A stretch of DNA of 64,000 bases from Azolla caroliniana (taxonomy: Eukaryota; Plantae; Polypodiophyta): assembly GCA_043228905.1 (NCBI GenBank), contig JBHGNT010000009.1:496001-560000 (forward strand), given 5' to 3'. The translations under genes were made by a program, and so were the position numbers. This document shows, one piece after another, positions 1 through 48,500 of the stretch. Below the pieces are notes generated by a model, which did no database searches, had not been told where the DNA came from, and saw only the letters and a program-made list of their open reading frames with translations. Positions within the stretch are counted from its first letter, which is position 1; every line of letters begins with the position of its first letter.

Positions 1-444
1 CGTATAATGCCCTGTTGTTGTACAAAAGAATCCAAGTATTTTAAACCCTCGAGAGAATAGATCATCTTTTTCATTTAACAAAACAAATGTATGAGCATAT
101 GAACCTATTGAACAACTTCATCCATTCATGTCATAATATAGTCAAAAATACATGTGGAGATTAAGGAATGTCAAAGAGAGTGTATTCTTGTTACATTCCA
201 ATTATGGAATGAACGGGCTTTGTAAATCCATCTCAAGTATTTATTTTACCCACTATTCTTTAGAACTTAAAAGGCCATTGTGTGGCTTCCATTGAAACAT
301 GTATATACATAGTTCAATGGAGTTATGCCTCACGTTAATATCATTGTACCTAGGATCCATACTAGTGTATATCCTATTGGTGGTTAACTGGGTAAGGGTG
401 GTTGTCGAGCACCCGAGAGATACTAGCTCATTTAACCTTAATGA

Positions 445-449
<5 letters not shown>

Positions 450-513
<64 letters not shown>
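450..513. repeat. (CT)n microsatellite
   Basis: Uninterrupted CT dinucleotide run of about 64 bp. Confidence 0.95.
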
Positions 514-516
<3 letters not shown>

Positions 517-660
517 ATCGTAATTAGCTTACCCTAGTGGTAAGTTGATAACATCACAAGCACTCTCTCTCTCTTTTCTTTTCTTTTTATCGTAATTACC
601 TTACCCTAGTGGTAAGTTGTTAGCACTACAAGCACTGCGTTTTGGGTTTGAAACCCAACT
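513..660 (+). mobile_element. Possible tRNA-derived SINE remnant with a duplicated 5' part
   Basis: TTTATCGTAATTA.CTTACCCTAGTGGTAAGTTG occurs twice (~513 and ~586). The second copy has an A-box-like TAGTGGTAAG followed by a B-box-like GGGTTTGAAACCC at ~644-656. Confidence 0.3.
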
Positions 661-2438: not shown

Positions 2439-3081
2439 GCTCTACATTTGTACATAAATCATTAATGTCACCTTTAGTGATTCCTTGAAGAAGAAAATAG
2501 AACACATGATAGATTTAGTGCCCATAACAAAACCTATAGATCAATGCACCTATGGATATATGAGCTTTAAAAGGATGAAATATCATGATTATTTTTAGGA
2601 TAAGGTTTTGTTCATCTAAATAAGTCACTTTGGCCTAACCAATATTAGAAGTGGAGAAAATAGATGGGATAATGTGTTTATACTTGAGTATCGTAGCTCC
2701 GATAATTTGAAAAGCTCCCCAAATTTTGCCAACTATGTCGAAAGCATGTAAAGCAAGCAATGAATTAGTCTTCGGCATTTTGTGGTGATGTGTCCACTAC
2801 ATCAAGAACCAATGGCAATGCATATCATGAAGGGTATATGACATTGTGTGAAGTCGCCTTTCTTCTTCCCTAGTGCCTTTGAACTTAACAACAATTAATT
2901 TGTTCCTAATTAGTTCTTTCTTTAAACAATTTGATTAATAGATTTTATTATTGTTTAAGATCAAATACAACCTATGGGAAATGATACCTTTTCAAGTATA
3001 TGATGTGTTATTCATTAGTGACTCTGAATGTTCATTAGTGAATTTTAGCGATGAATGTTGCAATTAAGAGTGCATATAATG

Positions 3082-3724
3082 CAGCAACAATCAAGGGGAA
3101 GAAGAGGAAGCATTTCATCTTTTTATTGAATTGCAGCATGAACATGTAATGCCAGACGTGGTCACTTTCATATTCTTCGAGAAGGAGAATACAAAACCTC
3201 ATGTAGTGAACTTTCTAGGTGATTTAACTGTGTGTATAAATCTCACTTCATTAGATGGATGTTTCAGCTTTTCGGATGATTTGGAAACACTTGAAAAGGT
3301 TGTTAATCTTCTTGCATACATAAGTCATAAGGATCTATTTGCAGATTTCTAAAGGAAGAAGCTTGATCGGAGGCTTCTATTTGACAAGAGTGCAAATGAT
3401 GATCATGAAGCAAAGTTGAAGTAACAGTGTGGAGATCAATTTACCTCCAAAACAACTATTGGAAAAGAAGCATTCAGGATGCCATGCATTCAGGATTAGA
3501 CCAAGCATTTGTACGGAATGTGTTTGAATTGCAGAATAAATATCTGCAATAGGTGAGTAATGCTTTGTACATCATTCCCTCTTTCACAAGGCTCTAAAGG
3601 AAGCTTTTGAAGTTTTCTGTAACAAAGGTGTTGATGGAAGCAGCAGCACTAACCTATTAGTTGTATTTTGTAGCAGATACGCTTTTTAAAACTAATGGAA
3701 GGATATCTTCTTTGGGGAAAAAAG
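3082..3724 (+). pseudogene. Chimeric processed insert: PPR fragments plus three permuted cullin-1 fragments, flanked by a 15-bp direct repeat
   Basis: Translates QGEEEEAFHLFIELQHEHVMPDVVTFI and KPHVVNFLGDLTVC (PPR-like), then [65 protein letters not shown] and [41 protein letters not shown] (CUL1-like). AGAGTGCATATAATG at 3067-3081 and 3725-3739. Confidence 0.85.
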
Positions 3725-4404
3725 AGAGTGCATATAATGTCTATAATAGAAGTATGTGTAGAGATAGGTTTGGAATAGCAATGCAAAGAAGTAAATCAAT
3801 AACAACCCTTTACAAGCCCATGATCTAAGCAAGAAATGACCTAATCTCAAAAAGTAAAGAATATGTGGAGTTTATGTATTGAATAAAGAAACTTCATATT
3901 ATAACATTATAGGGCATTTTCAAACTCTTTCTAGTTGGACTTGAAGTTCAACCCCATGGGGAAGCAATGGTGTGACGTGGGTGTCAAAGAGATATTTCTT
4001 GAGAACACAATGTTCATTCAATTCTTCTTCTTTGCATACCTTCTCGAATGCATCATGAGCCTTCTTCTCCAACTGAAGCTATGAGTAGCACTTTCATTCC
4101 CAAGGTGTATGAAACTTTCTACCTTTTCAATTATTACACACAATGTATGGTTTATACTTATTTTGTGTCTTAACAAACATAACGTTCATTTTAAAACTCA
4201 CGATGCATGCAAAAGTTTTGCAAGACACTTGTAAGCTTTTGTGCATCCTATAAACTATTTATTAAAATCACCACATCATTTGTACATAACAAAAGCATGA
4301 CTATTGCTTTCCAAATTGTAGCTTCTCCATGTCAATGACCTCCTCCAATTCCTTAATGCATTAACTATTGTTGGTTATTGGTTGGGCTTTATTTTTTTCC
4401 TCTA

Positions 4405-4908
4405 GAGACATACATAGTTAGCTATGACGGACCAATTGATAATATATGAGGGATTACAAGAGAAAGAAAACACTAAGAAAGTTTATCAACGGTAACATGA
4501 GGTTTGACAAGAGTGGGACGAACTAGTTGACAATTCATGAGGGGATATTGGAGAAAAAAACATTGAGATTATTTTGACACCTCTTGGAGTTTCCCTAGAT
4601 TGGACGAGTCATGTGATCCATGTAGTTATTTACCAAAATCCATGGTGTTAGTGAATCCCTAGATACATAGTTAGCTATGACGGACCAATTGATAATATAT
4701 GAGGGATTACGAGAGAAAGAAAACACAAAGAAAGTTTATCAATCGTAACATGATGTATGAAAAGGGTGGGAAGAACAAGTTGACAATTCATGAGGGGATA
4801 TTGGAGAAAAAAGCATTGAGATTATTTTGACACCTCTTGGAGTTTCCCTAGATTGGATGAGTCATGTGATCCATGTAGTTATTTACCAAAATCCAAGGTG
4901 TTAGTAAA
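4405..4908. repeat. Tandem duplication, unit ~255 bp, 2 copies
   Basis: ATACATAGTTAGCTATGACGGACCAATTGATAATATATGAGGGATTAC...CCAAAATCCA.GGTGTTAGT starts near 4410 and again near 4663. Confidence 0.9.
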
Positions 4909-5527
4909 TATAAACATATAACAAAAAATGTAGTAGCTCCAATACTATTTGACATTATTTCCAAATAATGATGTTAGCAATATGAAACAACTTTGAAAAT
5001 ACATGGTAAAGATACCATGTTGGTCCTATTATTCTTTGGGCAATGGGGCTTCTAAAATAACATTGTTCGTCCTCATGGGCAATATTTTAGATCCCGAGAC
5101 ATTTTGCTTTCTCATCCAATCTTACATGAAGTTGTGAGATTTGTCTTTTATTTCTTTCAACCAACATCAACATTCAAATAATATTGCAAAACATATACGT
5201 TATAAGGTTGATTTCAAATCCACACAACTCTCCCATGAAGTGTATTGTGTTGGCACATTCAATTATTTAGCTTCATAACAACTAACTCTCAAATTTCTAT
5301 CTCTGATAATGACAAGTCACCCATATCAATCCCCACCATTGGGCCCATGAAGTTATTTGCTTATATGATCCAGTGCTACTTGTTTTATTGATATGCTCAA
5401 GTCCTTCAACACATTCAAGATCAATACATGACGTACTACAACATGATTCTGAAGTCCATTGAACAATGAATATTTGTGTATGTGATCCAAGACACATTGC
5501 AAATTTGACATATGTCAAACTAGTTCT

Positions 5528-8500
5528 CCAAAATGAAGCTGCTTTCCCATTAGTTAGGAAGGATTATTACAAAGAGACTGTACAAGGAGGCTTATACACA
5601 AATCAGGGAATCTCCCTCCGATCAAGCTCAAGAAAATGAGACTACTTACATAACCTTTCAGACTGACTACTTAATGTAAGTAGATACCTATAGCTAAAAG
5701 CAGTGCCCTTCAGTGTTGGCTAGTACGAGCCAACTCTTGGGGCCTACAATAAAGGGAGGGTGGCAAGTGAGTAGGAAACAACCAACGTGGGGGTTAGGAT
5801 GGTAGTTCCACCTCGGGCCACTTCCTCCTTGCGTCACCCTAGGCGTGTTTTGCCATTCCTGCCAAAAGCGCAAACGAGCAGTGACCACGTCGTTGGAATG
5901 GTTGCAAACCTCATCCAATTGCCCTCGTAGGAAGCTAATAAGCGCAAACCATATGTCCAGGATCACTTCCTTCGGGGGCCGTACCAAATCTTGGAAGACC
6001 TTTAGGCAACGCGTTTTCCATACATACCACAGGGTGAAGCCTGCAATCAACATCCAATTTTCCAAGAACCTAGGGGATGCGGATTGCAAGCCTCTCTCAA
6101 AACGGATCTTGACAATTTTGCCTCTCATGCATACATAGCACCAATTATCCGCATTGAAGGCGTCCATCCACCTATCAACAGAGTGTGATCAATCCATGCC
6201 ACAACACTCGACGATGATGTTCCTTCCACTTCACATGCCGCAAGGAGGCGAGTCACTCTATCCCATACCTTTTGAGCTTGAGGGCAATCCCACAAACAAT
6301 GTCTCAGAGTCTGAATAGGTGAAGAGAAAAGTGGGCAACCTAACAGAACGCCATGTTTACCTAGCCATTCGCCAACAGGAACCACATTATGACTAATCTG
6401 CCACCAAAAGAGCTTGATCTTTTCAGGCATGTGGAGATGCCAGAGACCCTTCCAAAAGGTAATGAGCACCTCATCAGGGATGCCCAATGTTTGCCAACCA
6501 TTGCGTAGGGGGGGCATCTAGCTACAATTGTAAAGTCTGGCCCAATTTAGTGTTGTATTCGAAGAAATGGTGGAGTTTGCCGTCATGTTTCCACCTAAAA
6601 TCCCCTGGGTCCCATTCTAGTTCAACAAGGGGACAACAACCGTATACCCATAACTTCCAATGGGGTTCCACCTTAGCAACATCTGGGTTTGTCTTCCAAA
6701 TGTTATCAACCTGCGCCACCACTCGGATTGGGTGCCAAGAGCCCCTACTCTGACTCTCCCCCAAATTTGTATCTCTTCCCGATCCGCTTGCGCCCTTCAA
6801 CAACTTAACCATTCCAGCCTCATAAAAGAGACCGAACCATGCATCTTCTCTCACCTCCCCCATCGGAACCCTATCAATTGCCTCAGCTCTCCGCATTTTC
6901 ATAGCTCCCTTAAGGGGAGGGAATTGCTCGTGGGCTCCTCTTGAATAAACCATGCGTCTCCAATCATCTATAGAATGGAGCCTTGTCTATGCCATCTTTC
7001 CCCATGCTAGGCCCTTATGTTGCCCTAACATCATGTCGTCACTTGTTCGCACCTGAGGGTTCCAAAATAATGGATGTCTAGTCCACTCGATTAGTGTCTC
7101 CGGGGTGTGCTTGACCAAATGATGTCGTACGTGACACCATGCCTGCAAGATGAAGTTCGTGACCCTGTCCTCCAGTTGACAAGCCATCTTGGGTGGGACT
7201 CTGCTCGTGCAACACCAATTCAATGAGTCGAGCCAAGGCCTACCATACTTGGGAGTCCCCACTTGCAACCTATTGCGAAGTAGTACCTTCCAACACCCCT
7301 TACCTATCGTGACCTACTCACACCTATGCATATGCGGAAAAACACGGAGCTGTTGATAGGGTGATGACTTGCATTCACCCCAAGGTAACCCAAGAGATGG
7401 AAGTTGTGCTCAATAGCCCCATTTCTCGATTAGAACTCTCAGAGGTGCTCAGGGAATTGTGGAGAGGAGCATGCTCTGACCCCGATAGTCTCTCAAGAGA
7501 CTTTTTTGAGATTCATTGGGAAAGTGTTATCCCGTCATTGGAAGCCGGGGTTCATGAGATTTGAACCTCAGGACTGATGCCGACTGTTCTGACTGAGGGG
7601 ATGATCTATCTCATCCCCAAAGCGGCAGAGTGAAGCATAGAGTTGTGCCGATGGCGTCCAATCACAATCCTTAACACGATTTACAAGCTACTCGCAAAAG
7701 TCCTCGCTCGGCAGATAGCAAGCTTCTTATTGGACATCATACATGAGAATCAAATAGGGTTTATCAAGAGTAGGTGTATTTTTTATAATGTGCTGCTTCT
7801 CTAGGAAGTTATGGCATTGGCAAATCGCTCCATATCGAGCTCGGCTATTCTGATGTTAGATTTTGAGAAGGCCTACGACAAGGTGTTATGGCCCTTTTTG
7901 GAAAATTTGATGAGAGCTATGAGCCGACCCCAACAATGGAGGAATTGCACTTCTGCACTCTATCGGGCTACCAGTACCGTGCCGATAGTTGGTGCTAGGG
8001 GCCCCGCCTTCCAACTACAACGCTTAGTGAGACAAGGTTGACCCCTAGGCCCATATCTCTATCTATTTGTAACCGGGGCATTCTCTGCCTACTTACTAGC
8101 ACCAAGCAACGGACTGAGGGGATTGCCAATCCCCAATGAGAGTGAAGATCTTCTGTTATCTGAATATGCCGACAATATGGTCCTTTTCTTGCAAGGCGAT
8201 GATGAGAATTTGCAACAGGCTAAACATCTTGTTGATTACTTTTGTCATGCCGCTGGTGCCAAGGTCAATCGGGATAAAACCCAAGGCCTCTTGTTCAACG
8301 AACAAGAGAAACCAATGTGGCAACCCCATGCCGATTTTACATGGGTCCCTGATGGGACGACATTCAAGTACCTAGGATTTACGATGGGGAGTGCAATTGT
8401 CCCATGTGCAAGCCAAAATAAGGAGGAACCTGAACCAATGGAGTAGATCTAAATTATCCTTCGATGGTAGGGTCCTTATTGCGAACCAAGTGATGCTCAC

Positions 8501-8731
8501 CACCATGTGGCACTCAATCTCATGCTGGATTATGGACCCTGCAGGTTTGCACACGATTAAGGCTGCCATCAAGGGGTTTATATGGTCAGGTAAGGACAAC
8601 CCGATGGCTTCCGCCAGAGTGTCATGGCGTTGGTTAACGCAACTACGGGCAAAAGGGGGGCTTGGCCTCGTAGACCCCTTAATGCAGAACCGAGCATTGC
8701 TAGCCAAAATGGTGGTTCGATGCCTCCTACC
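5528..8731 (-). mobile_element. Degenerate 5'-truncated, 5'-inverted LINE copy of the family at 39437-45772
   Basis: 5528-7304 is the reverse complement of the intact element from 43984 to its 3' end. 7304-8731 is the + strand match to 42534-43982. TSD ATGTCAAACTA(G/T)TTCT at 5512-5527 and 8732-8747. Many stops and frameshifts (ORF pieces 5694-6167, 6125-6517, 6987-7268, 7361-7564, 7811-8041, 8123-8446, 8391-8789). Confidence 0.95.
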
Positions 8732-11700
8732 ATGTCAAACTATTTCTATTATTATCTCTACATGTGTAGTCATGGTTTTCATTCCATAATGCTACATAAT
8801 TTTTAAGGACCCTTCTAATACGATTGCACACGTAAAAATTACTTTTCAAATTTATACGACTTCTTTTCATCCATATAAGTCCGACCATTATATGTGTATA
8901 TGCCCATATCCTTAATATATGTGGCTTGAAATATTTTCATGTGCCAAATCAAGAAATGTTGAGCTTGAGACATACAAAGACTAAGAGAGACAGAGGAAGA
9001 TTGGCTTGAGTTTGTGTTGTCTATGAGATTGACATATTGGTTGCCTATTAGGTCAATTATGTAAACATGATGATATATTGAGAGAAGTTTTGGCTCATGA
9101 CACTCAATTAACGCTTGGACGATGGGTTTGATGGTTGATTTTGATGTGAAAATATTTCTTGAAAAGTTGTTTTGCAACATGGAAACTGTGTAGAAATTGT
9201 GTCATTGTAATTTGTTACCAAATGTAGCATCTTGAATAAAAATTGAAAAGTGGTTTCACAACATTAACGTTGATATGAGGTTTTATGATTTTTCCCAAAC
9301 ACATTATCAATTCAAATAATGTGTATTATTTACATGGGATGGATATGCATTTGAGTCACTCACTGTAATTGTATGAGCGGCTTTTGTTACAATTTGAAAG
9401 TTGATAGCCATTTGTACATTGTGGTGCTTGTCCTTGAATCATGATGTATGTTAACATCATTGTGTTTTTATGTAACTTTTCAACTTGGATATTGATAGCC
9501 AATACATTGGATTGTGATTTGTCTCTTTCAAGGCTCGAATTTCAACAAAGTCTTGGTGCTCTATTTCACTCTGCATGGCTAGTAAATATGATGAGTTACC
9601 CTTTGGATCCCTCTTAACCAAATTGTATTATAATATATTGTTGTTCTGGAGTTTAGACTACAATTTTCCATCAAACTTTTGACTTGCTAACACGTATCTT
9701 CTCGACATATGCACCAATGTGATTGTGTTTTGAAGATTGAAAGGGATGGGTTGCATAAGCTTATTGTCTACTTACATATGCTTACATGCTTAGATATATG
9801 TGTTGTTACAATGATTTTTTGTTTCCTTTCACACTCTTCACTAATATTGTGGGCAAATGTCTTAACGACAATAGGTTTCGTGATAATGTTTCCTTATTCT
9901 AATTTTCATACAAGAAGATGACATTTTTAGTAGCCAAATGTTTAAACATAATCTTATAATGTACTTTTCCAACACGAACCTAATTTCCCTCAATTTTTGA
10001 ATGCCCCAAATTCCTCTACACGTGACTTTTCCCCCTTGAAAAGACCTTAGCATGTGGTTCTCCCTCCCTCCTTTAAATCCCTTTGCATGTGCCATGGAAT
10101 TTAAATGCAACTAGGGGAAAACAAGCCTCTAATCTAGAAAAGGTCACACATTTTCTCCAGTATACAACATCAAATATCAGAAAATGTGATGTTTTCCCCA
10201 TTCATCAAATTTGCAAACATCAAATATTGATGAAACATTTCAATATAAACCTAGTATGTTTTTTAATAATGAGTTTTAGACAAAAGAACATAATCTCTTC
10301 ACGAATCACTATCCCTTATCTTGATATCATTATGAGTGTCTTTGAAAATATGCAATGAATAGTATTTTTTTTCCAAAAAACTCTACTTCGCATTAGTTAG
10401 CAAGCAATGAATAGTATTAATCGATGACAACATTGTATATTCATTTTTTATGACATCAAATAGATATTAATATGAAAAAAATTGTGTTTATGCTATAGAC
10501 GTATTAAAATAATTGCTTCAAAAAATGTGTTAATAGAACGTTTTATCACTATAAAACTTAGCTTGATTTTATGTATCATGCAAATGTACCAACTTGAAGG
10601 AAGCCTTAACCACCACAAGTGCCACCATCAAGTTGAAGGTTTCATATGAACATTGACACATCCAACTTTTGAATCATCAATTGTTCTTCTTTAACTTAAC
10701 ATCTTTTATTTAATATATTCTAGAAGGCCTAAGCATATGAAAAAAAGCCCATGACCAACACATCACAACGTGTACATCCATGACCCATCCAAATATTCAG
10801 ATGACTCAACCTTTATGGATATACATAATCATTGAAATTTCATATTTAACAAGCTAATGGAAATATATTAGCAAACCCACCAATGCTCAGGGTTCAATCG
10901 TGCAAATTATGTAACATAACTCTTCAATTAAACGATTGACATTTGAAATGTAACAAATATCATTTGATTCACTAGTGTCATGTAGTATTAGAACTCATCT
11001 AATTTATAGTAGTACTTACTATTATATGTCTGGCAAGTGTGTTGCCATAAATATATGGTCAATCACTCTATTTATGGCACTAATCATTACATAGCACAAG
11101 TTGAATTGAAATAGTATCCATATGTTTTCTTTTTATATGTAATTAAGCCATATTAATCATTGGTGTTAATGTAACTAATTAGGTATTAATCATTAAAATA
11201 CCTACAATTAATATCATCTTCCCTAATTGCTTATCTTCCTAAAGATTGATCGATTTTTTGCGTAAACTTAATTTTTTTCTTTAATATTAAAATATGGTGT
11301 ATGTCTAGGTGTTTTGTTTGTTCCCATTTGAAAAACCCTCTAAAACCCGTGGACTACCCTACCCTAACCAACTAGAGTTGGATGAATAGAAATAAAGCTC
11401 AAAGAGCTCTCATTGCATTTGTGTAAATAAGACAAATGCGTTAAAATCAATACATGCATATAGATTGATTTGGAGCTTTAGGTCCACCACCAAATGTCTT
11501 GATTTTATTACCTAATAACTTTCAAAATTTTAAGTTGGACCTTCTCCTCAATGCAACAATGTTCTTTCTTGTAAAATGCACAACAAAAACATGAAGTTGA
11601 ACTTTGCATTTGGTCATTGAACTCAACCTTTTATTTTGTTAAGAAGAAGTGATAGAACATGCATTCCAACATTGCACTCGATCATCAAATGCAAGAAAAA

Positions 11701-39300: not shown

Positions 39301-39799
39301 GGGTAGTAATTACTAATAAAATTGTTCCAAGTTCAAGGGAGTTTCAACAAGAGTTTTCTTATAAAATTTCTAGTCAAGAGTCAAGACATAAATGGCATGC
39401 ATGCATGCTGCTACTTCATAAGACTATATAATTTCCTTCTCTTTTAATAGAGATCGATGGCGCGCAGGCATGGCGTGAAGGAGTGGCGTGAAGGAGCAGG
39501 AGCGGGTGCACGCTGAGGAACGCACGCGCTACCCAACAGAGCCAGAGGCGCCAACTGCTGTCCAAGCCGTCACACTGGAGAACTGCAGGTAATAAGCAGC
39601 AGAGCGTTGGCGGGAGCAAACGCAGCAGAGCGCGGAGTGGGAGCAGCAGGAAAAGGCGTGCAGGAGCAGGAGTAGGTGCACACTGAGGAACACGCGCGCT
39701 GTCCAACAGAGTAAGAGGAGGAGCACAACGCCAATTGCTGTCCAGGGGGAAGGGAAGAACAACACATACAACCTAGGCTCGCAAGACACATAACTCGCT

Positions 39800-41269
39800 A
39801 TGATGGGAGGAATCAAGCTTCCACCAGCGTCCAATTTGCTCGATGAAGAAGGTGGATCAGATCTCGCCATTACCCTGTCCCCCGAGGCTAACCGTGTCTT
39901 AGCGGAAGAAATCGAACGCCTACGGCGTACCTCCTTCGTATGTAGGTTTCTGGCAGGTAGACCAAGTCGGGGCATGGTTCGGGACATGTTTCAGGTGGCT
40001 GTGTTGGAGAACATGCCGGTAATCAAGAGTGTCAGGGGTTTAGGGAAAAACTTCTTCCACATTGAATTAGGTAATGACTCGCTGGCGCAGCCATTGGTCG
40101 AGCTCAAGGTACTCGAACTGAAGTACGGCAAGGTGTTGCTCCAACCATGGTCACCAGGGTTCAATCCGATCGAAGAGTTACGGAAACTCAACAACCCTAG
40201 GGTGATCACCGCAACATTTCCTGGCCTCCCTCCACATTTGTACCATCTGCTCCCTCTTTTTGGCGAACAAGTAGGAATGATATGCCCTCAAAAAGCGTCA
40301 ATGGCAGACACAGTCGCAGAGGTGCCCAAGTTGCGTATCTTGGTGCTTTCCCTCCATGGACTTCCATCAAGGATTAGACTCTACTCTGAGGAGTTAGGCC
40401 TCACAGTGGTAAAAGTGGTTTTTGAGGGACTCCCGGGGCAGTGTTTCATTTGCAAACAGACAGGACACCTAGCTAAGGAGTGTCCTCGTAAGATTGGAAA
40501 GGGAAGCTCGGGACCACGACCCTCGGGCAAAGTCGGGACATCCAAGGGTGAAGAAGCTCCTTGGATATCCGTTAAGAAGAAGGGGAAACTTGGAGGCCTA
40601 GGTGCCTCCTCTCCCGCCCTCTTTCATGACCACCCCCTTGAAAGAAGTCCTGCCACCTTGTCACCAGCAAGCGTGGACGAGCAACCCTTGAAACGAGTAA
40701 AGATCCTCTCCAGGAGTGCCAAGGCACCCGACCTACAGGTGAGAGCTACCAACAGATTTACACTTCTTCAAGGGTTAGGGGATGGCGACCCAGCAGCGCT
40801 AGCAGCAATGCTGTCCCCGTGCGACTCCTCACGCCTTCCCCTGCGGGAGCCCGAACTCGTGTTCTCCACCCCGATGGAGATGCAACCCCAACTTGTACCG
40901 TCCACCCCGGAAGAGAAGCTGGCACAGCCCCCCCTCCCGGTGGAGCGGGAATGTGGTAGTGGCCTCAGATTAGTGAAATCGTGGATCCGGACGGGCAAGC
41001 TCAAGGACAAAGAAAAGGGTAAGATAGGAAGACCAACACCTGGTTTGGCGACGACTCTGTTAGATAGAGGGGTGCAAGTTGTGCCACCGCTTCGGAGCAC
41101 AAATGTATCGCGGGATCTATTTGAAGCGGGTCGAGAACGATCGGCTGAGAATCTTGTAGGGGATTTGCAGCCTGCAGTGGAGACCATACCCCCCGAAACA
41201 GGTGTTAGTTTGCCCCATGACATGGAGATCGGCCCGAACATGGGCGCCAACGTCACCGTTTTCGGATGA
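39800..41269 (+). CDS. LINE ORF1 protein (DUF4283/RRM-like N-terminus, CCHC zinc knuckle)
   Basis: 489 aa. CFICKQTGHLAKEC knuckle, LQPWSPGFNP and FPGLPPHLY motifs typical of plant L1 ORF1. Confidence 0.92.
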   Translation: MMGGIKLPPASNLLDEEGGSDLAITLSPEANRVLAEEIERLRRTSFVCRFLAGRPSRGMVRDMFQVAVLENMPVIKSVRGLGKNFFHIELGNDSLAQPLVELKVLELKYGKVLLQPWSPGFNPIEELRKLNNPRVITATFPGLPPHLYHLLPLFGEQVGMICPQKASMADTVAEVPKLRILVLSLHGLPSRIRLYSEELGLTVVKVVFEGLPGQCFICKQTGHLAKECPRKIGKGSSGPRPSGKVGTSKGEEAPWISVKKKGKLGGLGASSPALFHDHPLERSPATLSPASVDEQPLKRVKILSRSAKAPDLQVRATNRFTLLQGLGDGDPAALAAMLSPCDSSRLPLREPELVFSTPMEMQPQLVPSTPEEKLAQPPLPVERECGSGLRLVKSWIRTGKLKDKEKGKIGRPTPGLATTLLDRGVQVVPPLRSTNVSRDLFEAGRERSAENLVGDLQPAVETIPPETGVSLPHDMEIGPNMGANVTVFG

Positions 41270-44200
41270 GGATCCTAACGTGGAATGTACAGGGCCTTGG
41301 TGGAGGCCGACAACACCAAGAGTGTAGAAGACTTCAGGAGGAGTTGAATCCCCTTAATATAGGGGGCCATATTGACATATTGCTTTTGCAGGAACACCAC
41401 CTCTCGCAAGAGCGAACTCAGAGCTTAGTAAACCCCTTGTCAGGTGGGTGGACCACATGGTGGTCGGCTGCGCAGGGTGACCTCCACCGAAGAGGAGGGG
41501 TCTGCATCTCGATCAGCGATAAGGCCCGATACGAAGTAACATCATCTGGCACGCTGGTGGAGGGTCGGGCCTTATACGTGCTTCTGAAATGGAATCGCCT
41601 ACAGATTGGGGTGCTAAACATTTATGCCCCTAACTCAGCCCCCGAGAGAGCAATCTTTTGGAGGATGCTCGCGACAACATTACCTAATGTCGAGGCTTGG
41701 GTAATGGCAGGTGATTTCAACATGACTGAACACATGGGAGATAGGAAAGGAGGGACCCAGAGGCCTATTTATGGTGCGGAGCTGGATTCATGGGCTTTCC
41801 TAATTGGCAAAATCGGGGTGAAGGATACATGGGGCTCTTCCCTTAGGCGAAGCTCACATTCGCTGCACTTTTCTAGAGCCGCCGGGAATGCTAGGGGCGG
41901 TAGTCTTGCACGGCTAGACCGCATATACATCAGCTCATCCCTCGAAGAGCTCGGGGGCTCCTTTGCTATCTTGGCAGGCCTTACCTTTTCAGATCATCAG
42001 CCGGTGAGACTAGACCTTAACCCACCCAACGATAGCAAGGGCAGTCTCAATGTAAAGATCCCCATAAAGATCATGAAGAGTGAAGAGGTGAAGGCCGGTT
42101 TACAGAGTATATGGCAGGACACCATGGGCAGTAAATCAGCCAGCGAAGATCTGTTGAAAAAATTGGCCCGCTCGTCCTCCTTTTTACAACAAGAGACCAA
42201 GCGCGCCCTCCAACAGGTTAGAGCCATTGAAACAAAATTAAGGAAGGCCGTTGCGGCAGCGCAACGGCTGTTACAGGTAGACCCTAGTTGCAAATGGTCT
42301 AGAGCTAAACTAGAGGAAGCAAAGATGAAGGTACATGAAAGGACTTTGGAGAAGAACCGAATGTTGTTTCGAAGAAACGCAGCATGGTGGGCTAGAAAAG
42401 ACGACAAGGTCAACCGACATTTCTTTCACTACAAGGCACCCAAGGGTGGTGGTGGACGTATACACGGGCTGCGAAAACCAGACGGCTCAATAACGGAGGA
42501 CAAGACTGAGGTTCTGGAAATGGCAACACAATACTATCGTGACCTCCTCGCACCTACGCATGTGCGGCAAAACTCGGAGCTGGCTGATCGAGTGATGTCT
42601 TGCATTCACCCCAAGGTAACCCAAGAGATGGAAGTTGTGCTCGATAGTCCCATCTCTCGTTTAGAGCTCTCGGAGGCACTTAGGGGATTGCGAAGGGGTG
42701 CATGCCCCGGTCCCGATGGTCTCTCACGAGATTTCTTCGAGATTCATTGGGAATGTGTTCTCCCGTCCTTGGAAGCCGGGTTCCAAGAGATTTGGTCCTC
42801 AGGAAAGATGCCGATTGGTCTGGCTGAGGGGATGATATATCTCATCCCCAAATCCCAAGAGGGAAGCCTAGAGTTGCGCCAATGGCGTCCAATCACGATC
42901 CTTAACACGGCATACAAGATACTTGCTAAAGTCCTTGCTCAGCGATTAGCAAGCTTCTTACCGGACATCATACACGACAATCAAACTGGGTTTGTCAAGA
43001 ACAGGTGTATCTTTGATAATGTGTTGCTTCTTTGGGAAGCTATGGCATTGGCCGGTCGCTCCGTATCGAGCTCGGCTATTCTGATGCTAGACTTTGAGAA
43101 GGCCTACGATAGGGTGTTATGGCCCTTCTTGGAAAATGTGATGAGAGCTTTGGGCCTACCTCAAAAATGGAGGAATTGCACTTCTGCACTCTATCGGACA
43201 GCTACGAGTAGCGTGCTGATGGCTGGATCTAGGGGACCCGCCTTCCAACTACAACGCTCAGTGAGGCAAGGCTGTCCCCTAGCCCCATATCTCTATCTCT
43301 TTATAACCGAGGCTTTCTCCGCCTACTTACAAGCACCAACTAGCGGGTTGCGGGGATTGCCCATCCCCAATGCGACTGAAGATTTGCTGTTATCTGAATA
43401 TGCCGACGATACGGTTCTTTTCTTGCAAGGTGATGAGGAGAATTTACAGCGGGCTGAACATCTTGTCGAGGACTTTTGTCAGGCGGCTGGTGCCAAGATC
43501 AATTGGAATAAAACCCAAGGTCTATGGTTCAGCGAACAGGAGACACCAAGATGGCAACCCCATGCCGATTTTACGTGGGTCCCTAGTGGGACGACTTTCA
43601 AGTACCTTGGATTTACGATGGGGAGGTCAATCCCCAAGGGAGCTCAATTGGCCCACGTACAAGCCAAAATAAGTAAGAAGCTGAACCAGTGGAGTAGATC
43701 AAAATTGTCCTTCGCTGGTAGGGTCCTTGTGGCGAACCAAGTGCTGCTCGCTACCATGTGGCACTCAGTCTCATGCTGGATTATGGACCCTGCAGGTTTG
43801 CACGCGATTAAGGCTGCCATTAGGGGGTTTATATGGTCAGGTAAGGACAACCCACGGGCTGCCGCCAGAGTCTCATGGTGTTGGTTAACGCAACCGCGGG
43901 CCAAAGGGGGGCTTGGCCTCATAGACCCCTTAATGCAGAGTCGTGCATTGCTGGCTAAAATGGTGGTTCGCTGCCTCCTGCCCGGTAAGGGGTGTTGGAA
44001 GGTACTTCTTCGCAACAGGCTGCAAGTAGGGACTCCCAAGTATGGTAGGCCTTGGCCCGACTCCTTGAATTGGTGCTGCACGAGTGGAGTCCCACCCAGG
44101 CTGGCTTGCCATCCGGAGGATAGGGTCACGAACTCCATCTTGCGGGCATGGTGCCATATACGACAACATTTGGTCAAGCACACCCCGGAAACATTGACCG

Positions 44201-45579
44201 AATGGACTAGACAGCCACTATTCTGGAATCCTCATGTGCGAACGAATGACAACGCGATGCTAGGGCAACTTAAGGGCCTAGCATGGGGAAAGTTGGCACA
44301 AACAGGCCTCCTATCTATAGACGATTGGAGACGCATGGCTGATTCAGGAAGAGCCCAAGAGGTCCTTTTCCCTCCCCTCAAGGGAGCTACGAAAATGCGG
44401 AGACTGATAGCTGAGGCAGTTGACAGGGTTCCGATGGGGGTGGCGAGAGAACATGCATGGTTCGGTCTCTTTGACGAGGCTGGAATGGTCAAGGCGCTAA
44501 AGGGCATGAGCGGATCGGGGAGTGATACAGTTTTTGGGGACAGCCAGAGCAGCGGCTCTTGGCACCCAATCCGAGTGGTGGCACAGATTGATAACATCTG
44601 GAAGACAGACCCGGATGTTGCTAAGGTGGAACCCCATTGGAGGTTAAGGGTATACGGTTGCCGTCCCCTTGTCGATCTGGATTGGGACCCCGGGGATTTC
44701 AGATGGAAACATGACGATAGACTCCACCACTTCTTCGATTACACCACTAAATTGGGTCGGACTTTGCAACTGCAGCGAGGCGGCCCCCTTCGCAACGGCT
44801 GGCGAACATTGGGCATCCCCGATGAGGCGCTCATTGCCTTTTGGAAGGGTCTTTGGCGTCTCCACATGCCTGAAAAGATCAAGCTCTTTTGGTGGCAGAT
44901 CGGTCATAATGTGGTGCCCGTTGGCGAATGGTTAGATAAACGGGGCGGCCCGTTAGGCTGCCCACTGTGCTCTCTACCTAATGAGTCTCTGAGACATTGT
45001 TTGTGGGATTGCCCTCAAGCTCAAAAGGTATGGGATAGAGTGACTCGCCTCCTTGTGGCATGCGACGTTGAAGGAACAGCCTTGTGGAGCGCTGCGGCAT
45101 GGATTGATCACTCGGTCGAAGGGTGGACGGACGCCGTCAATGCGGATAGTTGGTGCTATGTATGCACGAGAGGCAAAATCGTCAAGATCCGTTTTGAAAG
45201 AGGCTTGCAGCCCGCATCCCCTAGGTTTCCGGAAATCTGGATGTTGATCGCAGGTTTCACCTTGTGGTATATATGGAAAGCGCGCTGCCTCAAGGTCTTC
45301 CAAGGTACAGTACGCCCCCCGGAGGAAGTGATCATGGACATATGGTTCGCGCTTATCAGCTGCCTACGAGGGCAACTAGAAGAGATCTGCAACCACTCCA
45401 ACGACGTGACCACTGCCCGTTTGCGCTTTTGGCAGAAATGGCAGAGCACACCTATGGTGATGCAAGGCGGGAGTGGCCCGAGGTGGAACTACCAGCCCCC
45501 ACGTTGGTTGTTTCCTATTCACCTGCCACCCTCTTTTCGGTGTAGGCCCCAAGAGCCGACTCGTACGAGGCCACATTGA
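41266..45579 (+). CDS. LINE ORF2 protein (APE endonuclease, reverse transcriptase, zf-RVT)
   Basis: 1437 aa. ILTWNVQG, LLQEHH, NIYAPN, AGDFN, RLDRIY, SDHQP (endonuclease). WRPITILN, LDFEKAYD, VRQGCPLAP, YADD, FKYLG (RT). CPLC..ESLRHCLWDC (zinc finger). Confidence 0.98.
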   Translation: MRILTWNVQGLGGGRQHQECRRLQEELNPLNIGGHIDILLLQEHHLSQERTQSLVNPLSGGWTTWWSAAQGDLHRRGGVCISISDKARYEVTSSGTLVEGRALYVLLKWNRLQIGVLNIYAPNSAPERAIFWRMLATTLPNVEAWVMAGDFNMTEHMGDRKGGTQRPIYGAELDSWAFLIGKIGVKDTWGSSLRRSSHSLHFSRAAGNARGGSLARLDRIYISSSLEELGGSFAILAGLTFSDHQPVRLDLNPPNDSKGSLNVKIPIKIMKSEEVKAGLQSIWQDTMGSKSASEDLLKKLARSSSFLQQETKRALQQVRAIETKLRKAVAAAQRLLQVDPSCKWSRAKLEEAKMKVHERTLEKNRMLFRRNAAWWARKDDKVNRHFFHYKAPKGGGGRIHGLRKPDGSITEDKTEVLEMATQYYRDLLAPTHVRQNSELADRVMSCIHPKVTQEMEVVLDSPISRLELSEALRGLRRGACPGPDGLSRDFFEIHWECVLPSLEAGFQEIWSSGKMPIGLAEGMIYLIPKSQEGSLELRQWRPITILNTAYKILAKVLAQRLASFLPDIIHDNQTGFVKNRCIFDNVLLLWEAMALAGRSVSSSAILMLDFEKAYDRVLWPFLENVMRALGLPQKWRNCTSALYRTATSSVLMAGSRGPAFQLQRSVRQGCPLAPYLYLFITEAFSAYLQAPTSGLRGLPIPNATEDLLLSEYADDTVLFLQGDEENLQRAEHLVEDFCQAAGAKINWNKTQGLWFSEQETPRWQPHADFTWVPSGTTFKYLGFTMGRSIPKGAQLAHVQAKISKKLNQWSRSKLSFAGRVLVANQVLLATMWHSVSCWIMDPAGLHAIKAAIRGFIWSGKDNPRAAARVSWCWLTQPRAKGGLGLIDPLMQSRALLAKMVVRCLLPGKGCWKVLLRNRLQVGTPKYGRPWPDSLNWCCTSGVPPRLACHPEDRVTNSILRAWCHIRQHLVKHTPETLTEWTRQPLFWNPHVRTNDNAMLGQLKGLAWGKLAQTGLLSIDDWRRMADSGRAQEVLFPPLKGATKMRRLIAEAVDRVPMGVAREHAWFGLFDEAGMVKALKGMSGSGSDTVFGDSQSSGSWHPIRVVAQIDNIWKTDPDVAKVEPHWRLRVYGCRPLVDLDWDPGDFRWKHDDRLHHFFDYTTKLGRTLQLQRGGPLRNGWRTLGIPDEALIAFWKGLWRLHMPEKIKLFWWQIGHNVVPVGEWLDKRGGPLGCPLCSLPNESLRHCLWDCPQAQKVWDRVTRLLVACDVEGTALWSAAAWIDHSVEGWTDAVNADSWCYVCTRGKIVKIRFERGLQPASPRFPEIWMLIAGFTLWYIWKARCLKVFQGTVRPPEEVIMDIWFALISCLRGQLEEICNHSNDVTTARLRFWQKWQSTPMVMQGGSGPRWNYQPPRWLFPIHLPPSFRCRPQEPTRTRPH

Positions 45580-48500
45580 AGGGCATTGCCTTGGATATAG
45601 GTAGCTTCTTACATTAAGTTAGGCCGCAAGGCAATGTAAGTGGCTCATCTTCTTTGGCTTGATCGGAGGAAGTCTCCCCGATGTGTGTACAAATCTCCTT
45701 ATAGACTCTATGTAATAATCCTTCCTAACTAATGGGAAAGTAGCTTTACTTTGAAAAAAAAAAAAAAAAAAAGACTATAATTTCCCTTTCACATTGGGGA
45801 CATGAAAAGGGTCAAATTTTTTTTGGGGGAACTAGCTCAATGGTTGGATACCACACAACTAAATTTAAACAAAGCACTCATATAATATGCAAAAAAATAA
45901 ATAAGACCAGGAACCACGTGAAAAAAAACATCAGCTAAGGTTTTTTTAGCATGCAAAAAACATTGGTTAAATATGTGATCTTAACATATGAAAGATTTTA
46001 AAGCACAATTATTTATTAAGTATTAGCTTCAAAGAATGAATGTATTAAAAATTCACACATGTTAAGGTTTCAAAATGCTGGCTTGACCTTAAGTACATCA
46101 AGATTCATAGAAAGAAATATAATAGTTTGCCCTCTAGTATCTATATTCCTTCTAGATTTGATAATTGACATTGGAAACATGTTATCTCACAAGAAGTTGA
46201 TGTTGAGCATCTAAACCATGTTGTTGGATCATGATTCTAATGTTAAAGCATAAAAAACTTGACATGTTTTGAGTAAGGATCACATGCCAAGCAACGGATT
46301 CAAATTCCTTCCTAGAATGATGTTTTTCTTAGAAATTAAATTGCTATCCGTAGTTTGTAGAATGCAGAATTCTACATTTACAATACTCTGAAGTATTCTA
46401 CCCATATTCTATGTTTTAGAACTGCCATTTTTTAAAATTTCACGTATTCTAAAAATATGATGTATTCTACTTATTTAACCGGTATTTATCATTTCAAAAA
46501 AGTCTTAAAATTTTATTTTATTTTATTGAAAAAAATACTTTAAATTTTAAGAAGTATTTAACGTATTTTACAAGTATTCTACACCTATGTAAAATACATA
46601 TTCTAAGTATTTTAAAAAAAGTTAGAATTACTTGTAGATTACTTAGCATACTTATTCAACACAAATGCACAAGTTAGTTTCCTTCCAACTTAAAATATTC
46701 AAACAGGTCTACTCCAATATTGGGTCACAATCAGAACATTATCATCATCAGCACTTAAGCACCTTCCAATGGACGAGATGTTCAAGTAACCGTAATTATA
46801 TAGATCCAAGACACCACATTCAAGAAAATGATTGTAGAAAAAAGACAATGAGATGTAATGTTATTTGGATGAATAGTTCCTTTTAAAAGCTTTATGTGGA
46901 TCATGGAAATTCAAGTGAACCAAAAATGAAGAATGCAATGAAGGTTGTTCCATATAATCTGAAGAACAAACCTATTGGCCCTCAATTGATACATTTACAT
47001 GGATGCTAATTGAGGTAAGCAAACCAACAACTTCACGGAATTGAAGAATGTTAATGAAGATGATTCACATGCAACAATTGTTTCTTTCCTTGTTTTCGTT
47101 GATCCTGGTCAATACCAATCAAAGATGCATTTGATGAATCTAATATAAGAAGTTATTACATTGTTGGATGTTCGAAAGTGAAGCTAAAAGGGTATCTAAC
47201 CAATCAACAAGTTTACTGACAAATGATTTGTTAATGATCTAACATATTGACTTGGTGATAACATAAAAGATTGTGTAAGAGAGGAACATGATTTTATAAA
47301 GGGTGATCCATATTAGATGCCATTATTAGTCTTCGGATGAACGTGAATTAACTTACCTTCACACTTTGCTAATTGTACAAATGATTGATGAAGGAATTTT
47401 AAGAAAGCTTGCAATATCTTTTCATATTAGATGCCAGTATAGTCTTGGGATGAACATAAACATGACTAAATTTACCTTCAATACTTTGCTAATTACAACA
47501 AGAACTGATGAAGCACAATAAGAGTTCTTATGAAATTTTAAGAAAGCTTGCAAGATCTTTTGTATTGCCCTAGGTTCCATAATCAATAACAATGAAACAT
47601 AGATCAGATGTATTCTCTTTGCTGAGCAAAACATGTTCACCGTTAACTCCTACAAAGAGCTGAGCAATAGTAGAGCAGAAAAATGAGTATGATTTATAAG
47701 AGTATGCATATGGTCCTAAATCACATTCTTTTCTTATCTTTGGTTTATTTCCTATGGTACAAGGAACCCTCCAACCAGAGTTCTAAACTCTTAGAAAGTC
47801 TAGAAATTCTTAACATCCACATGTTACCAGACCAAGATGTGGAACACTAGTTCCTTTAAAGCCTGTATGTGGTGTACAAGCAAGCCGGTCCACTCACTCG
47901 TGTCATTATATATTCAAGAAAATTTAGAGTGCAGTATTGCCTCAATCATTGCCAGTACTCGCATGGCTCATGTTATTCAATGCAAGAAACTTCTATAGAC
48001 CAGCAAGGTTGAAAACGTCAACATGTATTCTAGATGTGGATGAAGGTCAGAACTCTCCACCATCTATTCCTCACCTGCCCCAAAAAACAAAAATTCTGTA
48101 ATAGTTCTATCCAAGATTGGCACAATGTCCTCCATGTGGAAAGAAATTCTTCCAGCTGTATCTGGGAATGCATGAGGGTTTTCCATGGAAAATGCCATAA
48201 CCGAGGTAAAAAGAGACAGATGCCAAAAAAACAAGACTGTGGAGTCTCTAACACTCCAATCCATGCCAAAATATTGGGTCCAAAATTCTAATCTGTTCCG
48301 ACATATTCTTCTCTACGACTCTGATCTCATGGAAAACAAATAAATCGAAGTCCCAAACTACACAGGAATTATTGAGAACCCATATGCACACTAACAACAC
48401 CGCCCATAATTTTGGGTCCATACATGCATATATATAAGAGATGCAAATTCCAAAAGAATGAAAACATCCATTGAAAAGTTTCTTACCACAGCATGGTAGT

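What the first reader, a model, noticed from the sequence alone, without database searches (positions are those of the whole stretch)
3067..3739. TSD-flanked chimeric retrocopy stitched from PPR and permuted cullin-1 pieces
Seen: a 643-bp insert between perfect 15-bp direct repeats (AGAGTGCATATAATG), ending in a short A-run (GGGGAAAAAAG). It holds two PPR-motif fragments, then three CUL1-like fragments in scrambled order. The later segment (TLEKVV..QFTSK, ~3281-3451) comes first, then an earlier one ([12 protein letters not shown], 3453-3490), then a middle one ([19 protein letters not shown], ~3490-3671). GCATTCAGGAT recurs at the last junction. The PPR and first cullin pieces are in one reading frame. 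Established: ~15-bp TSDs with A-tails mark LINE-mediated insertion, and plant CUL1 genes are intron-rich. Inference: LINE RT jumped between at least two cellular mRNAs and within one of them, giving an exon-shuffling product with no LINE sequence.
Basis: partly seen in the sequence, partly recalled or inferred. Interest (0 to 1): 0.85.

Follow-up and report, generated by a model that had tools for sequence, protein, structure and literature searches.

The report
Truncated LINE copy carrying captured gene pieces
The 643-bp insert is a real, fairly recent LINE-type insertion, but it was not stitched together on the spot: it is a shortened copy of a multi-copy LINE family whose 3' untranslated region already carried spliced pieces of a PPR gene and of cullin-1.

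Summary
Perfect 15-bp direct repeats (3067-3081, 3725-3739) flank 643 bp holding PPR and permuted cullin-1 (CUL1) pieces.

The reading is partly right.
- Insertion: a related organism has the empty site, ending exactly at the first repeat copy. The repeat starts T|AAGA, like the duplications of two LINEs in this window.
- RNA origin: the cullin pieces cross four exon-exon junctions without intron, judged against two plant CUL1 genes.
- Not a one-off: the same mosaic, with the same internal junctions, occurs in many copies in four related organisms and in 15 public contigs at different loci with different poly(A) lengths.
- It does contain LINE sequence: the last ~60 bp are a LINE 3' end. In two independent contigs the mosaic lies between a LINE ORF2 (zf-RVT) and that 3' end. 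A third contig links the window's own subtype to the same LINE 3' UTR.

So this is a 5'-truncated copy of a LINE whose 3' UTR captured spliced host mRNA pieces. The piece junctions show microhomology, and the variants cannot be placed on one tree, so repeated reverse-transcriptase template jumps are the likeliest origin (inferred).

Unchecked notes from this scan describe similar LINE-tail mosaics elsewhere in this genome.

The parts
3067..3081 (.). Target-site duplication, copy 1 (15 bp). The target starts T|AAGA.
   Evidence: Exact repeat. In organism D the contig alignment ends exactly at 3081 and resumes at 3789, with 47 letters between where the window has 707. Its last bases (TG, and GCATAT further in) also match the element sequence at the truncation point.
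3082..3265 (+). PLS-class PPR gene fragment, sense, with a 234-bp internal deletion at about 3166-3172. The element copy starts here (5'-truncated).
   Evidence: Pfam PPR_2 is weak on the window ORF and clear on longer family members P0159 and P0151. L005 keeps the extra 234 bp. Other copies continue 5' of 3081 with conserved sequence.
3268..3451 (+). CUL1 cDNA piece 1: end of exon g (to 3298), whole exon h (3299-3354), and exon i from its first base (3355-3451). It has a 15-bp deletion and two stop codons.
   Evidence: Exon-by-exon alignment to L002. Whole exons h and i abut in less decayed copies L003 and L007.
3452..3489 (+). CUL1 cDNA piece 2: interior of exon b ([12 protein letters not shown]), joined to piece 1 out of order.
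   Evidence: The junction lies inside both exons, so it is not a back-splice. It lies in an imperfect ~11-nt similarity between exon i and exon b.
3490..3660 (+). CUL1 cDNA piece 3: end of exon e (to 3504), exon f (3505-3590), and the first ~70 nt of exon g (3591-3660). It has one frameshift and one stop codon.
   Evidence: Exon-by-exon alignment to L001. Exon f aligns to its last base at 3590, and exon g aligns from its first base at 3591.
3661..3717 (+). LINE 3' UTR terminal module.
   Evidence: 83-86% identical to the 3' ends of L004, L008 and L016. It resembles the 3' ends of both LINEs in the window. Summed contig depth is ~23,000 against ~45 in the flanks, and other copies run into long poly(A) at 3723.
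3718..3724 (+). Short A-run (A6 then G) at the 3' end of the element.
   Evidence: Sequence. Family members carry A8 to A19 at the same point.
3725..3739 (.). Target-site duplication, copy 2.

Best explanation
The insert is a 5'-truncated copy of a LINE (L1-type non-LTR retrotransposon) family.

In full-length members the 3' UTR holds, in order and all in sense:
- a tandem-repeat region;
- a piece of a PLS-type PPR gene;
- a permuted set of spliced cullin-1 cDNA pieces;
- the LINE's own 3'-terminal module, followed by poly(A).

The LINE machinery nicked the target at T|AAGA and reverse-transcribed the element RNA from its 3' end. It stopped about 640 nt in. The 5' end was joined at a short homology, leaving a 15-bp target-site duplication.

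The insertion happened in the lineage of organism A, after it split from organism D.

The mosaic is older than this copy. It most likely arose when a LINE reverse transcriptase jumped from LINE RNA onto host mRNAs and back at short homologies. Further jumps, or deletions, between family RNAs then reshaped it. This last step is inferred, not shown.
For: Insertion:
- Perfect 15-bp duplication.
- Empty site in organism D, ending exactly at 3081. Organism B has both a filled A-like version and a D-like version whose contigs break at the duplication, as an unfilled site would.
- The two LINEs in this window have 15-17-bp duplications that also start T|A(A)GA.

Family:
- 309-422 contigs per run lie on the insert at 80-100% identity, while the flanks are single copy.
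- 13 homologous ORFs were found.
- 15 contigs were fetched (L003-L017).
- The 3' flanks differ and the A-runs vary from short, interrupted runs to 19 A in L004, L008, L009, L010, L011 and L016.
- The 5' end points differ between copies.

LINE link:
- L004 and L016 are independent loci. Both run ORF2 C-terminus (Pfam zf-RVT, E 6.7e-10; tblastn to the window's LINE ORF2, E 3e-36), then UTR repeats, then the mosaic, then the 3' module, then A-run.
- L015 is a near full-length LINE (Exo_endo_phos, RVT_1, zf-RVT) and is 96% identical to L004 up to the UTR repeats.
- L017 carries the window's own arrangement downstream of the same UTR repeats.

RNA origin:
- Four exon junctions are crossed without intron, and one more in L003 and L007.
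- All pieces are sense relative to ORF2.

Jumps:
- Microhomology at each junction.
- The PPR deletion and the FTSK|QLLEK junction occur in three of the four possible combinations.
- Core identities do not follow the subtypes.
Against: - ORF2 continuity is shown directly only for the sister subtype (L004, L016). For the window's subtype it is shown only as far as the shared UTR repeats (L017).
- Whether the parent CUL1 of this genome has introns at the four sites was not tested on this genome.
- The 47 letters in the empty-site contig could not be read.
- In copy L003 a cullin exon-a piece ends exactly at its splice-donor position and is followed by GT and unknown sequence. This could be retained intron, so part of the capture may have come from unspliced RNA or from DNA.
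- Template jumping as the origin of the mosaic is inferred from the junction anatomy only.
- The contigs come from metagenome assemblies, so their host species is assumed, not shown.
Confidence: 0.8

Rival explanations
1. This is a one-off chimeric retrocopy made during this very insertion: a LINE reverse transcriptase jumped between cellular PPR and CUL1 mRNAs, and no LINE sequence is included.
For: Target-site duplication, A-run, spliced sense pieces and microhomology at the junctions.
Against: The same piece junctions recur in L005 and L017 (92-95% identical) and in many contigs of four organisms. The disabling mutations contrast with a perfect duplication. The last ~60 bp are a LINE 3' end.
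Confidence: 0.03
2. A separate non-autonomous retroposon (PPR-cullin body plus a borrowed LINE 3' module, SVA- or SINE-like) moved in trans. The ORF2 linkage in L004 and L016 would then be secondary, from recombination or from nesting in a LINE.
For: The window's subtype is not seen joined to ORF2. L005 carries a longer PPR part than the LINE-linked copies. The 3' module is about 25 times more abundant than the mosaic, so it is shared with other elements.
Against: L017 shows the window's subtype directly downstream of the LINE UTR repeats. Those repeats are contiguous with ORF2 in L004, L015 and L016. No tRNA-like head or Rfam match was found. The 5' ends vary as in 5' truncation.
Confidence: 0.12
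3. The mosaic was assembled at the DNA level inside a master LINE copy, by nested retrocopy insertions, tandem duplication and deletions. It then spread by ordinary retrotransposition, with no template jumps during reverse transcription.
For: The cullin part is a near-circular permutation, with break points only ~30 nt apart in exon g, as a cut from a tandem dimer would give. Microhomology also fits replication slippage. L003 may hold intron sequence after exon a.
Against: No internal poly(A) or nested duplication is seen at the piece borders. All pieces are sense. The character combinations need recombination or parallel events.
Confidence: 0.25
4. DNA-level capture by a Helitron or Pack-MULE, or patchwork filler DNA from double-strand-break repair.
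For: Mosaics of gene fragments are typical of these. Filler DNA also shows microhomology.
Against: There are no terminal inverted repeats and no Helitron ends. A 15-bp duplication does not fit MULE (9-11 bp) or Helitron (none). The pieces lack introns, and there is a poly(A) and a LINE 3' end. It is a multi-copy family with variable poly(A).
Confidence: 0.02

Closest known systems
Bipartite and tripartite LINE chimeras made by reverse-transcriptase template jumps (U6-L1 and mRNA-L1 chimeras in mammals; WEIRD/Mg-SINE/MGL in Magnaporthe; PMC2104539, PMC11838501)
   Same: LINE 3' part at the 3' end, other cellular RNAs fused 5' of it in sense, flanking direct repeats of ~14-15 bp, poly(A), and jumps at short homologies.
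   Different: Those are mostly single dead-end insertions with two or three parts. Here the captured pieces lie inside the 3' UTR of a LINE that kept ORF2 upstream. The composite multiplied to many copies in several species and kept changing.
Bs1 of maize, an LTR retroelement carrying intron-less pieces of three host genes (reviewed in PMC13317346, PMC5470649)
   Same: A plant retroelement carrying a same-strand mosaic of spliced host gene fragments and copying them around.
   Different: Bs1 is an LTR element, where jumps occur in a virus-like particle. This is a non-LTR LINE. The 2026 review of plant gene capture lists no LINE case.
SVA and its 5'-transducing subfamilies in hominids (own knowledge; cited in PMC13317346)
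   Same: A composite element, moved by LINE machinery, that picks up host exons and spreads them.
   Different: SVA is non-autonomous, has no LINE 3' module, and gains exons by upstream transcription and splicing. Here the pieces are internal to a LINE UTR and permuted.
Ordinary processed pseudogene or retrocopy
   Same: Intron loss, target-site duplication and an A-rich end.
   Different: There is no parent 3' UTR or poly(A) site at the end. There are two parent genes, a permuted order and a LINE 3' end, and it is multi-copy.

Membership tests
LINE (L1-type non-LTR retrotransposon), 5'-truncated copy | Target-site duplication of variable length flanking the copy, with an empty site elsewhere | tested here: met
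   15/15-bp duplication. Empty site in organism D ending at 3081.
LINE (L1-type non-LTR retrotransposon), 5'-truncated copy | 3' end homologous to the LINE 3' UTR and followed by an A-run | tested here: met
   3654-3723 is 83-86% identical to the 3' ends of L004, L008 and L016. A6 here, and up to A19 in other copies.
LINE (L1-type non-LTR retrotransposon), 5'-truncated copy | Collinear with the 3' part of full-length elements that encode endonuclease and reverse transcriptase | tested here: met
   L004 and L016 run from ORF2 (zf-RVT) through the UTR and the mosaic to the 3' end. L015 has Exo_endo_phos, RVT_1 and zf-RVT. L017 links the window's subtype to the same UTR. For the window's subtype the link stops at the UTR repeats.
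LINE (L1-type non-LTR retrotransposon), 5'-truncated copy | Different copies truncated at different 5' points | tested here: met
   The window copy starts at 3082, L008 about 5 nt further in, and L009/L013 and L010 in the UTR repeats.
Processed pseudogene of one mRNA | Introns absent where the parent has them | tested here: met
   Four junctions are crossed. The parent structure was taken from two other plant assemblies, not from this genome.
Processed pseudogene of one mRNA | Collinear copy of one mRNA ending in its own 3' UTR and poly(A) | tested here: not met
   Two parent genes, permuted order, and a 3' end that is LINE sequence.
One-event template-jump chimera (Buzdin/Gogvadze type) | Chimera formed during the insertion that carries the duplication | tested here: not met
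   The same internal junctions occur in other copies at other loci.
Pack-MULE | Long terminal inverted repeats and a 9-11-bp duplication | tested here: not met
   No inverted repeat at the insert ends. The duplication is 15 bp.
Helitron | 5'-TC...CTRR-3' ends, 3' hairpin, insertion between A and T without duplication | tested here: not met
   The ends read CAGCAAC... and ...GGGGAAAAAAG, and a 15-bp duplication is present.
SINE | Pol III-type head (tRNA, 7SL or 5S derived) | tested here: not met
   No tRNA found by ARAGORN and no Rfam family at E up to 1 in the insert.
circRNA-derived retrocopy | Permuted junction lies exactly at exon borders (back-splice) | tested here: not met
   The FTSK|QLLEK junction lies inside exon i and inside exon b.

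The most novel reading that the evidence does not exclude
In this genome, LINE 3' UTRs act as a capture-and-shuffle cassette for spliced host mRNAs, a 'Pack-LINE'. The reverse transcriptase leaves the LINE RNA, copies stretches of host mRNAs, and returns. The element stays mobile and spreads and reshuffles exon mosaics over many loci and several species. The near-circular permutation of the cullin part (break points ~30 nt apart) could then reflect end-to-end jumping between fragments of one cleaved mRNA, or one round on a circular template.
Probability: 0.35. Interest if true: 0.7.

Novelty: new variant of a known kind. Interest (0 to 1): 0.5.

Why it matters
In plants, gene-fragment capture is documented for Pack-MULEs, CACTA elements, Helitrons and LTR elements. 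A recent review of the field lists no LINE case.

Here a LINE family carries intron-less pieces of two host genes inside its own 3' UTR. It remains mobile and spreads them to many loci in at least four related organisms, and it generates new junction variants.

If this is general in the genome, as several unchecked notes of this scan suggest, it would be an RNA-level route to exon shuffling. It would also be a source of dispersed antisense or small-RNA templates against PPR and CUL1 genes.

For annotation, it warns that 'chimeric retrocopies' flanked by duplications may be truncated LINE copies, not fresh events.

Tried and rejected
- circRNA or back-splice origin of the permuted order: rejected, because the junction is inside both exons.
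- Terminal inverted repeats or another copy inside the window: none found.
- tRNA head or any Rfam family: none found.
- Nucleotide similarity between the carrier LINE (L004, L015) and the window's own LINEs: none beyond the ~30-nt 3' module. ORF2 C-termini are only 23% identical, so they are different LINE families.
- The sequence after the exon-a piece in L003 matches nothing in the CUL1 introns of L001 or L002 and has no ORF. It stays unexplained.
- The short cullin hits of the protein-representative search were mostly transcript fragments or gene-model chimeras, so they gave no parent gene for this species.
- No RNA run holds the stretch, so expression could not be tested.

Full report
**1. 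The observation**

- The 15-mer AGAGTGCATATAATG occurs exactly twice in 64 kb, at 3067-3081 and 3725-3739. Allowing two mismatches, 0.29 matches are expected by chance.
- The three-frame translations show a PPR-like stretch followed by three cullin-1-like stretches in permuted order.
- Pfam gives weak but correctly placed hits: PPR_2 at E 0.005; Cullin profile positions 406-426 for 3353-3421; Cullin profile positions 328-365 for 3561-3686.
- A 90-codon open frame (3080-3349) joins the PPR part to the first cullin piece.
- The window holds no other copy and no terminal inverted repeats.

**2. The cullin pieces come from spliced RNA**

I took the exon map of CUL1 from two plant genome loci returned by the protein search: L001 (assembly GCA_025200525.1) and L002 (GCA_047302245.1). 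Both have the same intron positions with GT-AG borders.

- Exon h (56 nt) lies end to end on 3299-3354.
- Exon i starts with its first base at 3355.
- Exon f ends with its last base at 3590.
- Exon g starts with its first base at 3591.
- Borders e|f and g|h fall at 3504|3505 and 3298|3299.

So four exon junctions are crossed with no intron.

In less decayed family members (L003, L007), complete exons h and i abut, and the i|j border is crossed as well.

The out-of-order junction (FTSK|QLLEK, 3451|3452) lies inside exon i and inside exon b. It is therefore not a back-splice, which rules out a circRNA template in the usual sense.

Caveat: the parent gene of this genome itself was not available.

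**3. It is a real insertion, and fairly recent**

I laid contigs of four public runs on 2600-4200.
- Organism A holds the filled site with 0 differences.
- A 5.7-kb contig of organism D covers 2600-3081 and 3789-4198 with only 47 letters between, where the window has 707. The window has 49 bp between the second repeat copy and 3789. This is an empty site carrying one copy of the 15-mer, and its left part ends exactly at 3081.
- Organism B has both an A-like filled version and a D-like version whose contigs break at the duplication.

The duplication starts T|AAGA. The two LINEs in this window have duplications of 15-17 bp that start T|AAGA and T|AGAA.

**4. It is not a one-off**

In the same lay-out:
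- The flanks are single copy (summed depth ~42-48 in X1), while the insert collects 309-422 contigs per run at 80-100% identity.
- The last bin collects depth ~23,000.
- Other copies run into long poly(A) exactly at 3723.
- Other copies continue 5' of 3081 with a conserved sequence.

The tool warns that depth is not copy number. I therefore rely on the number of distinct contigs and on the fetched copies.

A protein search with the 90-codon frame found 13 relatives. I fetched their contigs (L003-L014, L016, L017).
- They are 84-97% identical to the window copy over 3076-3467.
- They have different 3' flanks, and their A-runs range from short, interrupted ones to 19 A.
- They have different 5' end points.
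- L005 and L017 share the window's full arrangement, including the piece junctions.

The stops, frameshift and deletions in the cullin pieces were therefore inherited. This explains how a decayed body can sit between perfect duplications.

**5. The mosaic sits in a LINE 3' UTR**

- L004 begins with 442 codons of a LINE ORF2 C-terminus. Pfam zf-RVT gives E 6.7e-10, and tblastn to the ORF2 of the window's intact LINE gives E 3e-36 at 23% identity.
- On the same strand L004 then runs through about 600 bp of tandem-repeat UTR, the PPR-cullin mosaic, about 190 bp of further UTR, the 3' module and an A-run.
- L016 comes from another sample and has a different 3' flank. It aligns with L004 end to end across ORF2 end, UTR, mosaic, 3' module and A8 (97%).
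- L015 is a near full-length LINE with Exo_endo_phos, RVT_1 and zf-RVT. It is 96% identical to L004 up to the UTR repeats, where the contig ends.
- L017 carries the window's own subtype directly downstream of the same UTR repeats.

The window's last ~60 bp (3661-3717) match this LINE 3' end far better than they match cullin exon g. They also resemble the 3' ends of the two unrelated LINEs in the window.

So the insert does contain LINE sequence. It is best read as a 5'-truncated LINE copy. At the 5' junction the element reads ...GCATATTG|CAGCAAC and the target reads ...GCATATAATG|. That is two contiguous shared bases plus six more nearby, as in microhomology-assisted 5' joining.

**6. How the mosaic arose (inferred)**

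- All pieces are sense relative to ORF2.
- Each junction lies in a short similarity:
  - about 11 imperfect nt between exon i and exon b;
  - GGAT or ATT between exon b and exon e;
  - ATTTTGT between exon g and the LINE 3' module.
- Three subtypes exist downstream of FTSK:
  - the window type;
  - a type that goes from QLLEK straight into LINE UTR (L004, L008, L009-L016);
  - a type that continues through exon i|j, then the CUL1 C-terminus to the stop codon, then an exon-a piece (L003, L006, L007).
- The 234-bp PPR deletion and the FTSK|QLLEK junction occur in three of the four possible combinations. Core identities do not follow the subtypes: L003 to L004 is 98.4%, while the window to L005 is 90.7%. 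The history therefore needs recombination or parallel events.
- A 16-bp shorter form between the two GCATTCAGGAT copies exists in organism C.

This fits repeated template jumps of the reverse transcriptase, first out of and back into LINE RNA and later among family RNAs. It does not prove them.

DNA-level assembly in a master copy remains possible. One detail points that way: in L003 the exon-a piece ends at its splice-donor position and is followed by GT and unknown sequence.

The cullin part as a whole is nearly a circular permutation, with break points ~30 nt apart in exon g. I cannot explain this with confidence.

**7. Comparison with known systems**

- Template-jump LINE chimeras with 14-15-bp duplications are known in mammals and a fungus (PMC2104539, PMC11838501).
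- LTR elements with spliced host fragments are known in plants (Bs1; PMC5470649, PMC13317346).
- The 2026 review of plant gene capture has no LINE example.

What differs here is that the captured pieces are internal to the UTR of a LINE that kept its coding part, that the composite multiplied, and that it keeps changing. I class it as a new variant of a known kind.

One follow-up note of this scan calls the genome a fern. Other unchecked notes describe LINE tails with MAPK and PPR mosaics and a PPR fragment with a LINE-type tail elsewhere in it. I did not test those.

**8. Verdict**

- Observation: confirmed.
- Interpretation: partly supported. It is a LINE insertion with spliced RNA origin. 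It is not a fresh chimera and not free of LINE sequence.
- Confidence in the main reading: 0.8.
- Interest: 0.5.

Noticed in passing
window 39415-45790: Long LINE with ORF2 on the + strand, ending in an A19 run. It is flanked by a 16-17-bp duplication (AAGACTATA..AATTTCC, one indel) that starts T|AAGA. Its last ~27 nt resemble the 3' module of the insert.
   Followed up: partly
window 5512-8747: LINE copy on the - strand with almost no A-run. It has a 15/16-bp duplication starting T|AGAA and the same 3' end motif as the long LINE.
   Followed up: partly
window 3040-3074: A 35-bp stretch spans the left flank and the first duplication copy. It matches a very high-copy repeat in all four runs (summed depth up to 26,000), with conserved sequence on both sides that differs from the window. 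It is probably a short chance or relic match. It breaks the short-read contigs at this point.
   Followed up: no
L003:1368-1780: In this family copy a CUL1 exon-a piece follows directly on the CUL1 stop codon. It ends exactly at the exon's donor site and is followed by GT and 340 bp of unidentified sequence. This could be retained intron.
   Followed up: partly
L001:8001-13621 (GCA_025200525.1): A gene model (P0003) fuses a starch-synthase-like N-terminus to CUL1 exons a-g with their introns, and then to unrelated exons. It is a DNA-level partial duplicate of CUL1 in another plant.
   Followed up: no
protein P0072 (717 aa, from the representative search): A protein model from another genome holds duplicated, out-of-order CUL1 fragments embedded in what reads, by eye, like a retrotransposon polyprotein. 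This is another case of cullin pieces carried by a retroelement.
   Followed up: no
L016:1672-1814: The 3' flank of this LINE copy looks, by eye, like coding sequence of a copia-type element, so the LINE may have landed in an LTR retrotransposon.
   Followed up: no
window 4410-4909: Tandem duplication of a 247-nt unit (94% identity, spacing 253).
   Followed up: no
window 419-640 and 1960-2290: Long (CT)n microsatellites and CT-rich degenerate repeats.
   Followed up: no
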